A stretch of DNA of 63,910 bases, the filler included, from Platydemus manokwari (taxonomy: Eukaryota): assembly GCA_037951405.1 (NCBI GenBank). It is 6 parts of 6 records of this genome, joined end to end, with 100 filler letters (N's around TTAATTAATTAA, not from the genome) between each part and the next. Parts side by side here need not be neighbours in the genome. Positions count along the whole stretch, not along the records: positions 28,417 to 42,984 come from JBBMOY011441422.1; 5 more parts are not named here. One strand, written 5' to 3'. This document shows positions 31,014 through 32,974 of the stretch, in pieces (position 1 is the first letter of the stretch; every line of letters begins with the position of its first letter). The translations under genes and the position numbers were made by a program. The notes beneath the pieces were generated by a model. It did not search any database, was not told where the DNA came from, and worked only from the letters and a program-made list of their open reading frames with translations.

Positions 31014-31515
31014 AAAATTAAATTATGAAATTTTATATTTCTTTAAATAAAATTATGAAATCTATATCACGTTTTCAAAAGGTTTAGTATTAATACCATC
31101 CTCACAAATAAATCTCTTTTTATCAAAATTATGTAAAGCTCATTTATTTGTTGATAATATTTGCATTTCATGTTTATCTGAATTGAATCTCATTATATCC
31201 TGATAATTATCTTTCTTATTAAATATACAATCTTTTATTAAAATTTTTGTAATTACCGCTTTTTGAATTCTCTTATTTTTTATTTTTTATTTATTGCCTA
31301 TTACTTCATAACAATAACATTTTGATCTTATAGATATCCATTCAATTAAAATTTTTCCGTTTAATTCGTCTTTAAATTTTCCTGGTACTTTTTTATTGAT
31401 TTCATTATATAATGGGTGATCTTTATTATATTCGAAGAAATCAAATTCATTCTTTAATCCTTCATCATTATTTAAATCTTCATAAATATCCTCTGTTTTA
31501 ATATTAAATACGTAT

Positions 31516-31937
31516 TGTTAGTGGCTAATCCTTCGTCGCTTTTTAGGTTATATTGAAAACTCATAACTATTAAAGTGCAAAAAAATGTGTTTTCATATTA
31601 AACATTATTCAAACAAATATTCCTTCTTTTAAAAATTCCGATTATTATAAAACATATTTTTGAAACACATAAATTTAATGAATAATTTTATAAAACATTT
31701 TGAGAGGTTACAGTAACGGTCTGAGCAATATAAATAATAAATATTTTTTAATATAATTAATTAAAATTATTCTTTGTTTAAAATTTGTTTAAAAAATATG
31801 TTTTATAATAATCAGAATTATTAAAAGAAGGAATATTTTTTTGAATATTGTTTAATATGAAAACATATTTTTTTGCACTTTAATAGTTATGAGTTTTCAA
31901 TATAATCTAAAAAGTGACGAAGTGTTAGCCACTAACA
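31516..31937. repeat. Long imperfect palindrome (about 165-bp arms)
   Basis: tgttagtggctaatccttcgtcgctttttagg...gaaaactcataactattaaagtgcaaaaaaa pairs with tttttttgcactttaatagttatgagttttc...gtgacgaagtgttagccactaaca. Confidence 0.95.
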
Positions 31938-32441
31938 TGGCGACCACGCATCTGGAATCGAGCCTGAAAAGATAAGCGACTGTAAATTATAAAAGAAGAT
32001 TTTAGATAATATATTAGAGAAGATATAAAAAGGATATAATAGAAGATATAGAAGAAGATATAAAAGAAGATATAACAAAAGATAGATATATCAAAAGATA
32101 GATTGAAGATGAAAAAGAAGTTATTAAAAGATAGAAGAATTAGAGTTATCGCTTAATGAGATATGTAGATGATTCAAGACAGAGACAATTACGAAATAAA
32201 AGATTTTAAATAAAGGGGGATGTGAGATGTTTTATATGAAATAAATTTCCATTTAATTTAAAACAATTCTCATGCACATTTTGTTCTAATTTTATTCAGA
32301 TTTATTTTAATTTTATAAAAAATTAAATCAATGTAAAATTAGAAATATTTGCTTAAATATTTGGATTTAAAATAGATTGATTGTGTCTTGACTTTTTTGT
32401 TTGATTTTAGTGTGTGGTTTTTAAAATAGCAGTGGCTAACA
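31516..32441 (+). mobile_element. Non-coding LTR-type (TRIM-like) insertion with dissimilar ends
   Basis: TSD cgtat/catat and TG...CA termini. PBS TGGCGACCACG at 31938, PPT aaaggggga ending at 32220, family A LTR at 32221-32441. Confidence 0.8.
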
Positions 32442-32974
32442 CATATGAATCTGTACCCATATATAGTACTTTAATATTTTCTTTATATTTGGGTTTTAAA
32501 ATATTATAATAAAATTTGTATATTATTAATTTGCTTAATTCTAAAATAGAAAATCCTAAGTAAATTGGCCTATTTAATTTTACCTGCTTTCTATTATAAT
32601 GAAGCGCATATAAATCATCACTAAATTTTGTAAATCTTTTATATGTTGGTTTTGTATTTTGTTTTCTTGCTTTATTTGAACTTGTAAAAAGTTTTATATT
32701 TTCACTTTTTCTAATATTCCTCATAGTTTTACCTGAGAAAGAATTATTCATTAACTTCCAAATATTTTTCCATAGTCACTTGTCTCTCTAGTTCTTAGAT
32801 CTGTGTTTCTTTTAACCATGGTTTTTGATTAAATTTTATTATTCGATTAACTTTCTTTATTTTTATTACCATTTTTCAATAGAATTGTAAGTTTCGATAA
32901 TGTATGACATAATGTTTTTTATCTGTTAGATCAAAAACTAATAAGTCTGGTAAATTTATTTTGTTTATTTCAAA

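What the first reader, a model, noticed from the sequence alone, without database searches (positions are those of the whole stretch)
31511..32446. Retroelement-like insertion whose 5' 'LTR' is a 422-bp palindrome unrelated to its 3' LTR
Seen: removing 31516-32441 plus one TSD copy restores the polymerase sequence TDSYVFNIK, so the unit appears to have inserted as one event. Its layout is TG-palindrome-CA, PBS, 280-bp GA-rich spacer, PPT, then an ordinary family A LTR. The two ends share only about 10 nt (AGTGGCTAA), and the palindrome ends in a mini-hairpin TGTTAG-CCA-CTAACA. Known: standard LTR replication yields identical LTRs. Inference: either a non-canonical fold-back replication/strand-transfer mode or a chimeric integration. 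The hairpin could also yield dsRNA or small RNAs.
Basis: partly seen in the sequence, partly recalled or inferred. Interest (0 to 1): 0.8.

Follow-up and report, generated by a model that had tools for sequence, protein, structure and literature searches.

The report
Mini LTR retroelement with palindromic head
A 926-bp non-coding LTR-type retroelement sits in a decayed gene, and where its left repeat should be it carries a 422-bp hairpin that looks like a fossil of a known reverse-transcription error (snap-back of the first DNA piece made), which is a curiosity rather than a new kind of element.

Summary
Positions 31516-32441 are one TG...CA unit flanked by a 5-bp duplication (CGTAT/CATAT, 4 of 5 match). 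Removing it restores a minus-strand ORF, and two metagenomic homologues run across the junction without a gap.

The unit consists of a 422-bp palindrome, a primer-binding site, a purine-rich 283-bp internal domain, a polypurine tract, and a 214-221-bp LTR unrelated to the palindrome arms.

Three metagenome contigs carry small non-coding LTR elements (TRIM-like). They share the same U5 end plus PBS (CTAACA|TGGCGACCACGCAT), the same PPT and LTR start, and similar internal lengths, but have an ordinary LTR on both sides of the internal domain. The architecture is therefore a known kind, and the palindromic head is the oddity.

The left terminus is the exact reverse complement of the U5/PBS boundary. 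The plus strand 31516-31951 reads as minus-strand strong-stop DNA, then a turn, then its copy, then the PBS.

My best explanation (about 0.45) is a one-off event. Self-primed strong-stop DNA of a sibling or helper family made the PBS jump onto a family-A minus strand, and integrase inserted the product. No second copy could be found, so whether this is a family or a single event remains untested.

Interest is moderate.

The parts
31511..31515 (.). Left copy of the 5-bp target-site duplication (CGTAT).
   Evidence: Removing one copy together with the element restores the host reading frame.
31516..31711 (+). Left arm of the palindrome. It starts TGTTAGTGGCTAA, the reverse complement of the right arm's end. 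On the plus strand it reads as tRNA-primed minus-strand DNA of the right arm.
   Evidence: The first 13 nt are identical to the reverse complement of 31925-31937.
31707..31717 (.). Centre of the palindrome, GTTAC-A-GTAAC. This is the proposed turn-around point.
   Evidence: and the fold.
31713..31937 (+). Right arm of the palindrome, in the U5 position. It ends ...CACTAACA directly before the PBS. It is 31 nt longer than the left arm, partly through an 11-nt tandem duplication at 31773-31794.
31923..31937 (+). Mini-hairpin TGTTAG-CCA-CTAACA at the U5-like end.
31938..31968 (+). Primer-binding site TGGCGACCACGCAT (31938-31951) plus a partly conserved leader running to CCTGAA.
   Evidence: The site is invariant across L001-L003 in alignment A1. 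The junction 14-mer has 0 matches expected by chance. The 11-mer TGGCGACCACG is also the start of the HERV9 PBS (PMC4724089).
31969..32211 (+). Purine-rich, non-coding internal domain with about 8 degenerate 12-nt units (31988-32103).
   Evidence: The only open frame of 55 aa or more within the element (stop to stop) is a 75-aa low-complexity frame at 31928-32152 on the minus strand, which crosses this domain; it was not scanned against any protein library.
32212..32220 (+). Polypurine tract AAAGGGGGA.
   Evidence: It aligns with AAGAAGGGGGA in the relatives in alignment A2.
32221..32441 (+). 3' LTR. TG start at 32221, or at 32228 by alignment with relatives; it ends GCAGTGGCTAACA.
   Evidence: It is unrelated to the palindrome arms.
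32442..32446 (.). Right copy of the target-site duplication (CATAT).
32442..32775 (-). Upstream part of the interrupted host ORF (...NSFSGKTM...YMGTDSY).
31290..31515 (-). Downstream part of the interrupted host ORF (YVFNIKTEDIY...KFKDELNG).

Best explanation
This is a small non-autonomous LTR retroelement of the TRIM type, inserted by a retroelement integrase into a decayed ORF. Its 5' LTR was never formed. In its place is a snap-back product of reverse transcription.

Proposed sequence of events (inferred, not shown):
1. In a particle holding two related RNAs with the same tRNA primer site, minus-strand strong-stop DNA of one RNA (family P, a sibling or the helper element) started normally at the U5/PBS boundary and ran about 200 nt to the RNA's 5' end.
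2. Instead of jumping, its 3' end folded back at a short inverted repeat and copied itself, then copied the tRNA's 3' end. This gave rc(R-U5)-turn-(R-U5)-PBS.
3. That molecule resembles plus-strand strong-stop DNA in carrying a 3' PBS. It annealed to the PBS complement of a normally made family-A minus strand.
4. Both strands were completed, giving palindrome-PBS-internal domain-PPT-LTR_A.
5. The left end is an inverted U5 end (...CTAACA-3' on the bottom strand), so integrase could use both ends and made a 5-bp duplication.

The copy has no U3 at its 5' end and should be unable to propagate. The arms have since diverged by about 7-9%, and small indels have accumulated near the centre.
For: **Shown**
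- One TG...CA unit with a 5-bp duplication, and exact restoration of the host frame across the site, confirmed with homologues.
- The left terminus equals the reverse complement of the last bases before the PBS (13 of 13 nt). The palindrome therefore begins exactly where tRNA-primed DNA begins and ends exactly at the PBS.
- The palindrome reaches a short central inverted repeat.
- PBS plus leader, and PPT plus LTR start, are conserved in order and spacing with metagenome elements that have an ordinary LTR on both sides of the internal domain. Internal domains are 237-334 nt there and 283 nt here. The right arm ends in the same CTAACA as those U5 ends.
- The arms and the 3' LTR are unrelated, so two templates are needed.
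- The arms differ by 17 mismatches and by slippage-type indels. This argues for an old, real structure and against an assembly artefact.

**From the literature**
- Self-priming of minus-strand strong-stop DNA is a documented aberrant reaction of HIV-1 reverse transcription, restrained by nucleocapsid protein (PMC4668388, citing Guo et al. 1997).
- Mismatched terminal repeats and tandem arrays are described for TRIMs (PMC6934838). In L001 the two LTRs are only 78% alike.
Against: - This is a single locus, and no family-P LTR was available to show that the arms are an R-U5.
- The arms (about 195-225 nt) are as long as a whole LTR of this group (214-268 nt). P would therefore need a longer LTR, or the template RNA started upstream of the usual site.
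- The model needs three uncommon steps at once: mixed packaging, snap-back, and an intermolecular PBS jump.
- The inner 45 nt of the arms are much less well matched than the outer 150 nt. Post-insertion decay has to be assumed to explain this.
- Integration of a self-primed strong-stop product has not, to my knowledge, been documented.
- Complementarity of the PBS to a canonical tRNA is convincing for only 11-14 nt. Further in, the T-arm-like match is 2 nt out of register.
Confidence: 0.45

Rival explanations
1. Family-level architecture. Either a family P has a naturally palindromic 422-bp LTR, and an intermolecular plus-strand strong-stop transfer or recombination gave a 5' LTR_P / 3' LTR_A chimera. 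Or hairpin-headed elements regenerate the palindrome every cycle.
For: - Mismatched LTRs can arise by an intermolecular second jump (established retrovirology).
- The termini TGTTAG...CTAACA of the palindrome look like LTR ends.
- A transcript starting in the left arm would give strong-stop DNA that must snap back and would rebuild the palindrome (inference).
Against: - No second copy was found in the piece, in the four metagenome loci fetched (L001-L004), or in the viral and prokaryotic collections.
- Relatives have ordinary LTRs.
- A whole-LTR palindrome still needs a fold-back origin.
- A unit without U3 and without a repeat (R) shared by its two ends has no evident way to make the first jump unaided.
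Confidence: 0.15
2. A DNA-level change after an ordinary insertion. Either an inverted duplication by replication template switching, or a fold-back/MITE insertion followed by a deletion that removed the original 5' LTR.
For: - Long inverted repeats and fold-back elements are common in AT-rich repeat-laden DNA.
- The centre carries a short inverted repeat of the kind that seeds template switches.
Against: - Both borders of the palindrome coincide to the base with functional borders, the target duplication on the left and the U5/PBS junction on the right. A DNA-level event has no reason to respect these.
- No remnant of an LTR_A-like 5' LTR is left, and the palindrome alone has no target duplication.
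- The right arm would still have to be a 5' LTR unlike the 3' LTR.
Confidence: 0.15
3. The 926 bp are co-linear with the element's RNA (R-U5-PBS...PPT-U3-R), with AGTGGCTAA(CA) as a very short R and the palindrome as U5. On this reading it is a copy made without LTR regeneration.
For: The two ends share a direct 9-11-nt repeat, and the order of parts is that of a genomic RNA.
Against: - Both ends are integrase-type TG...CA termini with a 5-bp duplication, and there is no poly(A).
- The 3' LTR ends in the same CTAACA that abuts the PBS in all relatives, so it is a complete U3-R-U5.
- The short shared motif is largely explained by the near self-complementary U5 end.
Confidence: 0.05
4. It is a 926-bp solo LTR whose internal PBS-like and PPT-like strings are chance, or the palindrome is an assembly artefact.
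For: Solo LTRs with TG...CA ends and a 5-bp duplication are the commonest remains of LTR elements. Palindromes can be read-chimera artefacts.
Against: - PBS plus leader, and PPT plus LTR start, are conserved in sequence, order and spacing with independent elements from a metagenome.
- The arms differ by 17 substitutions and 31 gap columns, which artefactual inverted duplicates would not show.
Confidence: 0.05

Closest known systems
TRIMs (terminal-repeat retrotransposons in miniature) and other small non-autonomous LTR retrotransposons
   Same: - Under 1 kb, and no ORF that looks protein-coding.
- TG...CA ends and a 5-bp target duplication.
- A tRNA-type PBS directly after U5, and a PPT directly before the 3' repeat.
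- Relatives have 256-268-nt terminal repeats, and one tandem LTR-internal-LTR-internal-LTR array (L003), as described for TRIMs (PMC6934838).
   Different: The 5' terminal repeat is absent. A palindrome of unrelated sequence takes its place, so the defining pair of direct repeats is missing.
Self-primed (snap-back) minus-strand strong-stop DNA of retroviruses, known from HIV-1 reverse transcription in vitro
   Same: The predicted product is rc(R-U5)-turn-(R-U5). It starts at the tRNA/U5 junction, and after copying the tRNA end it carries a PBS. The plus strand 31516-31951 has exactly this layout.
   Different: - It is described as an abortive product restrained by nucleocapsid protein. Here it would have completed a strand transfer and been integrated.
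- The partner strand belongs to another family.
Fold-back elements and MITEs
   Same: A long terminal inverted repeat that folds into a near-perfect hairpin.
   Different: There is no target duplication of its own, its borders are those of an LTR-element compartment, and it is followed by a PBS.
DIRS-like retroelements (inverted terminal repeats, tyrosine recombinase)
   Same: A retroelement with inverted repeats, in AT-rich genomes.
   Different: DIRS elements have inverted repeats at the two ends of the element plus an internal complementary region, make no target duplication, and have no tRNA PBS/PPT layout. None of that fits here.
Inverted-duplicate transposon loci that make hairpin RNA (for example Mu killer in maize)
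   Same: An inverted duplication of a transposon's terminal region that would give a long hairpin RNA if transcribed.
   Different: No evidence of transcription or small RNAs here, and the proposed origin is by reverse transcription rather than by DNA rearrangement.

Membership tests
LTR retrotransposon, TRIM type | Two direct terminal repeats (LTRs) of the same sequence | tested here: not met
   The 5' block and the 3' LTR are no more similar than shuffled sequence. Only 9-11 nt are shared.
LTR retrotransposon, TRIM type | TG...CA termini and a 4-6-bp target-site duplication | tested here: met
   The ends are TGTTAG...CTAACA. The duplication is CGTAT/CATAT (4 of 5 match). The host frame is restored and homologues are contiguous across the site.
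LTR retrotransposon, TRIM type | A PBS complementary to a tRNA 3' end directly after the 5' repeat | tested here: inconclusive
   TGGCGACCACGCAT lies at the right place and is invariant in four relative copies. Its 11-mer is the start of the HERV9 PBS. The organism's tRNA was not available, and beyond 14 nt the register is off by 2.
LTR retrotransposon, TRIM type | A polypurine tract directly before the 3' repeat | tested here: met
   AAAGGGGGA at 32212-32220 aligns with the relatives' PPT.
LTR retrotransposon, TRIM type | Small size and no coding capacity | tested here: met
   The unit is 926 bp. The only open frame of 55 aa or more within the element (stop to stop) is a 75-aa low-complexity frame on the minus strand (31928-32152), which was not scanned against any protein library. 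Rfam finds nothing in the element.
LTR retrotransposon, TRIM type | Multiple dispersed copies in the genome | not testable with these tools
   The source genome is not in the collections. The piece holds no second copy.
MITE / fold-back DNA transposon | Its own target-site duplication flanking the inverted repeats | tested here: not met
   The flanks of the palindrome alone are ...CGTAT and TGGCG..., with no duplication.
MITE / fold-back DNA transposon | Many copies of the palindrome as an independent unit | not testable with these tools
   There are none in the piece. Pattern scans gave none in the viral collection and only 2 chance hits in bacterial genes in the prokaryotic collection.
DIRS-like retroelement | Inverted repeats at the two ends of the element, an internal complementary region, and no target duplication | tested here: not met
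   The inverted repeat is confined to the 5' block, a 5-bp duplication is present, and the layout is PBS/PPT.
Retrozyme (hammerhead-bearing small LTR element) | A hammerhead ribozyme in the repeats | tested here: not met
   No Rfam family matches in the element at E up to 1.

The most novel reading that the evidence does not exclude
The palindrome-PBS head is not a one-off. It could be the heritable signature of a lineage of hairpin-headed mini-retroelements. Their strong-stop DNA would snap back obligatorily, rebuilding the palindrome each cycle. They would borrow the first strand transfer and the 3' LTR from a co-packaged family-A RNA. That would be a parasitic replication mode not described for LTR elements, and a built-in source of hairpin RNA against the donor family.
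Probability: 0.07. Interest if true: 0.85.

Novelty: new variant of a known kind. Interest (0 to 1): 0.5.

Why it matters
If the reading is right, this locus is a natural, integrated record of a reverse-transcription side reaction known from test-tube work, the self-priming of strong-stop DNA. It would show three things: such a product can complete the second strand transfer, that jump can occur between two different element families sharing a primer site, and two U5-type ends are enough for integration in vivo.

It also gives a simple route by which a genome can acquire a long hairpin made of a retroelement's R-U5. That is the kind of locus that can seed small-RNA silencing of the donor family.

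As a single decayed copy in an unidentified AT-rich eukaryote, it is a lead for anyone with the whole genome, not a result.

Tried and rejected
- **Alternative genetic codes.** They do not open real ORFs in the piece. Code 6 only inflates ORFs in AT-rich DNA.
- **Rfam.** It finds nothing in the element. The only hit in the piece is a sub-threshold mir-303-like hairpin elsewhere.
- **tRNA genes.** There are none in the piece, so the primer tRNA could not be identified.
- **Host ORF identity.** Pfam, PHROGs, NCBIfam and PDB-sequence scans of the host ORF and its two homologues gave nothing usable.
- **Source organism.**
  - The word search with a sedlin exon found no protein.
  - Exact-protein look-ups of two window ORFs found no contig.
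  - The source genome therefore seems absent from the collections, and more copies could not be sampled.
- **Collection scans.**
  - Viral contigs: 0 hits for the PBS junction and for the palindrome end.
  - Prokaryotic genomes: 0 hits for the PBS junction.
  - Prokaryotic genomes, palindrome end: 2 hits that are chance matches inside bacterial coding sequence.
- **Similarity searches.**
  - blastn of the arms, internal domain and 3' LTR against the piece and the fetched loci gave only AT-rich noise.
  - A profile of the metagenome LTRs finds neither the arms nor the 3' LTR. The relatives therefore share signals, not LTR sequence.
- **Tf1-type self-priming.** I considered it and dropped it, because no sequence in the element complements the PBS.
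- **Literature.** Searches found nothing describing an integrated palindromic 5' LTR. Guo et al. 1997 could not be opened.
- **Not used.** The large representative-protein search and structure prediction, because the element is non-coding and the claim does not rest on a protein.

Full report
**Setting**

The piece 28417-42984 has no N and 17-36% GC in 500-nt windows, mostly 20-27%. It is nuclear DNA of a eukaryote. Three exon-like frames at 38458-38944 (+) match Pfam Sedlin_N, the best at E 5.8e-17, and are separated by frame changes typical of short introns. Long ORFs are otherwise rare and broken. The region looks like repeat-rich, decaying sequence. It is not human-like.

**The observation**

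The unit 31516-32441 (926 bp) begins TGTTAG and ends CTAACA. It is flanked by CGTAT (31511-31515) and CATAT (32442-32446).

On the minus strand, an open frame ending ...VLYMGTDSY (32442-32775) and one beginning YVFNIKTEDIY... (31290-31515) become a single frame when the unit and one flank copy are removed. The word search found two metagenomic homologues, P0001 (46% identity) and P0002 (50%). Both read TDTDSF-x-x-HI-x-T-x-DVY straight across this point. P0002 aligns to both halves with the junction at adjacent residues. A 5-bp target duplication and a single insertion event are therefore well supported.

No profile library names the host ORF. Its NSxxGK and DTDS motifs recall protein-primed family-B polymerases, but that is my recollection and was not tested.

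**Anatomy of the unit**

1. **Palindrome, 31516-31937.**
   - The outer 155 nt of each arm are 93% complementary.
   - With gaps, pairing runs to a centre GTTAC-A-GTAAC at 31707-31717: 178 matches, 17 mismatches, 31 gap columns.
   - Part of the excess length in the right arm is a perfect 11-nt tandem duplication.
   - As single-stranded DNA it folds at -144 kcal/mol, z = -27.6. As RNA the value is -201.5 kcal/mol.
   - Each arm also holds a weaker internal sub-palindrome.
2. **PBS.** TGGCGACCACGCAT starts directly after the CA, at 31938.
3. **Internal domain.** A 70%-purine stretch with about eight degenerate 12-nt units.
4. **PPT.** AAAGGGGGA at 32212-32220.
5. **3' LTR.** A 214-221-nt block ending GCAGTGGCTAACA.

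The arms and this block are no more alike than shuffled sequence.

**Relatives**

It returned three short contigs from one sample (L001-L003), which carry small non-coding LTR elements:
- LTRs are 256-268 nt, running TGTTTAC...CATCTAACA.
- The PBS is the same, with a partly conserved leader up to CCTGAA.
- The internal domains are purine-rich and 237-334 nt long.
- The PPT is the same and is followed by a similar LTR start.

L003 is a tandem LTR-internal-LTR-internal-LTR array with identical LTRs. L001 has an LTR on each side of its internal domain, but the two are only 78% alike. Tandem arrays and unequal terminal repeats are described for TRIMs (PMC6934838).

LTR bodies are not conserved between these elements and the window element. 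The relationship is one of shared replication signals, which presumably means the same kind of helper.

This places the window element among TRIM-like non-autonomous LTR retroelements. It also shows that the expected 5' structure is an ordinary LTR ending CTAACA next to the PBS.

**What the palindrome is**

Two facts constrain the origin.
- The right arm occupies the U5 position and ends in the family's CTAACA before the PBS.
- The left terminus of the whole element is the reverse complement of that same end (13 of 13 nt), and it abuts the target duplication.

The U5/PBS junction is where tRNA-primed minus-strand DNA starts. The plus strand of the element from 31516 onward therefore reads as minus-strand strong-stop DNA (5' to 3'), a turn at a short inverted repeat, its complementary copy, and then the PBS. 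This is the product expected if strong-stop DNA primes on itself and then copies the 3' end of its tRNA primer.

Self-priming of strong-stop DNA is a known side reaction of HIV-1 reverse transcription, restrained by nucleocapsid protein (PMC4668388, citing Guo et al. 1997).

Such a molecule carries a 3' PBS as plus-strand strong-stop DNA does. It could make the second jump onto any minus strand ending in the PBS complement. Completing both strands gives the observed order of parts. The left end is then an inverted U5 end, so both 3' ends finish in ...CTAACA, which explains integrase-type insertion with one 5-bp duplication.

The arms do not match the 3' LTR, so the snap-back DNA and the minus strand must come from two templates that share the primer site. 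The conserved PBS across this group makes that plausible. The donor may be a sibling family or the helper element.

These steps are inferred. What the sequence shows is the layout and the base-exact borders.

**Alternatives**

- **A propagating family, or a chimera with a naturally palindromic LTR.** This is not excluded, but I found no second copy anywhere I could look. The unit also lacks a 5' U3 and a usable R.
- **A DNA-level inverted duplication, or a fold-back transposon plus deletion.** This has to hit two functional borders to the base and still leaves unlike LTRs.
- **An RNA-colinear copy with AGTGGCTAA as R.** It conflicts with the integrase-type ends and with the 3' LTR ending in the U5 hexamer.
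- **A 926-bp solo LTR.** It conflicts with the conserved order and spacing of PBS and PPT signals.
- **An assembly artefact.** It conflicts with 17 substitutions and slippage indels between the arms.

**Limits**

- This is one locus, the organism is unknown, and the source genome is absent from the searchable collections.
- The arms are about as long as a whole LTR of this group, which sits a little awkwardly with an R-U5 identity.
- The centre of the palindrome is more decayed than its outer parts.
- The primer tRNA is not identified. The 11-mer TGGCGACCACG equals the start of the HERV9 PBS, whose tRNA label is disputed between Arg and Trp (PMC4724089).

**Verdict**

This is a real and unusual structural variant of a known kind of element. 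It is best read as a fossil of a reverse-transcription accident, not as a new replication strategy. Interest is moderate. It would rise sharply if a genome-wide search showed the palindromic head to be heritable.

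Noticed in passing
window 29431-30161 (+): An array of about 8 copies of a 69-nt unit (23 codons), 73-87% alike, inside open frames reading ...SEDFIREFQNKI.... It looks like a repeat-protein gene or gene fragment. The one piece scanned had no Pfam match.
   Followed up: partly
window 38458-38944 (+): A sedlin/TRAPPC2-like gene in three exon-like frames (Pfam Sedlin_N, best E 5.8e-17). This shows the piece is intron-bearing eukaryotic nuclear DNA. 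The word search found no protein sharing words with its middle exon, so the organism seems poorly represented in the protein collection.
   Followed up: partly
window 38900-41900: A GC-richer block (31-36% GC against about 20-27% around it) with many broken frames on the minus strand and no Pfam match. It may be a decayed mobile element of foreign composition.
   Followed up: partly
window 35601-35640 and 42945-42984: A 40-nt inverted repeat, 83% complementary, with arms 7.3 kb apart. The second arm lies at the very edge of the piece. These could be terminal inverted repeats of a large DNA transposon that encloses the sedlin-like gene and the GC-richer block.
   Followed up: no
window 28431-29333 (-): A run of open frames with a CxxC...H zinc-finger-like start and a YTGPG...DVDY stretch that gives a sub-threshold hit to the Pfam phospholipase A2-like domain (E 0.057). 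It lies on the same strand as the interrupted host ORF and may belong to one large decayed element.
   Followed up: partly
window 39442-39505 (-): A 64-nt hairpin with a sub-threshold Rfam match to mir-303 (30 bits against a gathering score of 77, E 0.053). It is probably a chance hairpin.
   Followed up: no
L003 1-1068 (and L001, L002): Metagenome contigs from one JGI sample carry TRIM-like elements with the same PBS. L003 is a tandem LTR-internal-LTR-internal-LTR array with 100% identical LTRs but internal domains of different length (334 and 249 nt). L001's two LTRs are only 78% alike.
   Followed up: partly
window 31520-31530, 31923-31937 and 32431-32441: The 3' LTR ends AG-TGG-CTAACA, while the right arm ends AG-CCA-CTAACA. 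The three central bases are reverse complements of each other within a near self-complementary 15-mer, so the 3' LTR end matches the left terminus in direct orientation. I have no explanation beyond a shared U5-end consensus plus chance (1 in 64 for the triplet).
   Followed up: partly
window 31580-31661 and 31791-31873: Each palindrome arm contains a weaker sub-palindrome of its own. About 85 nt of the left arm match the right arm at 74% in direct as well as inverted orientation.
   Followed up: no
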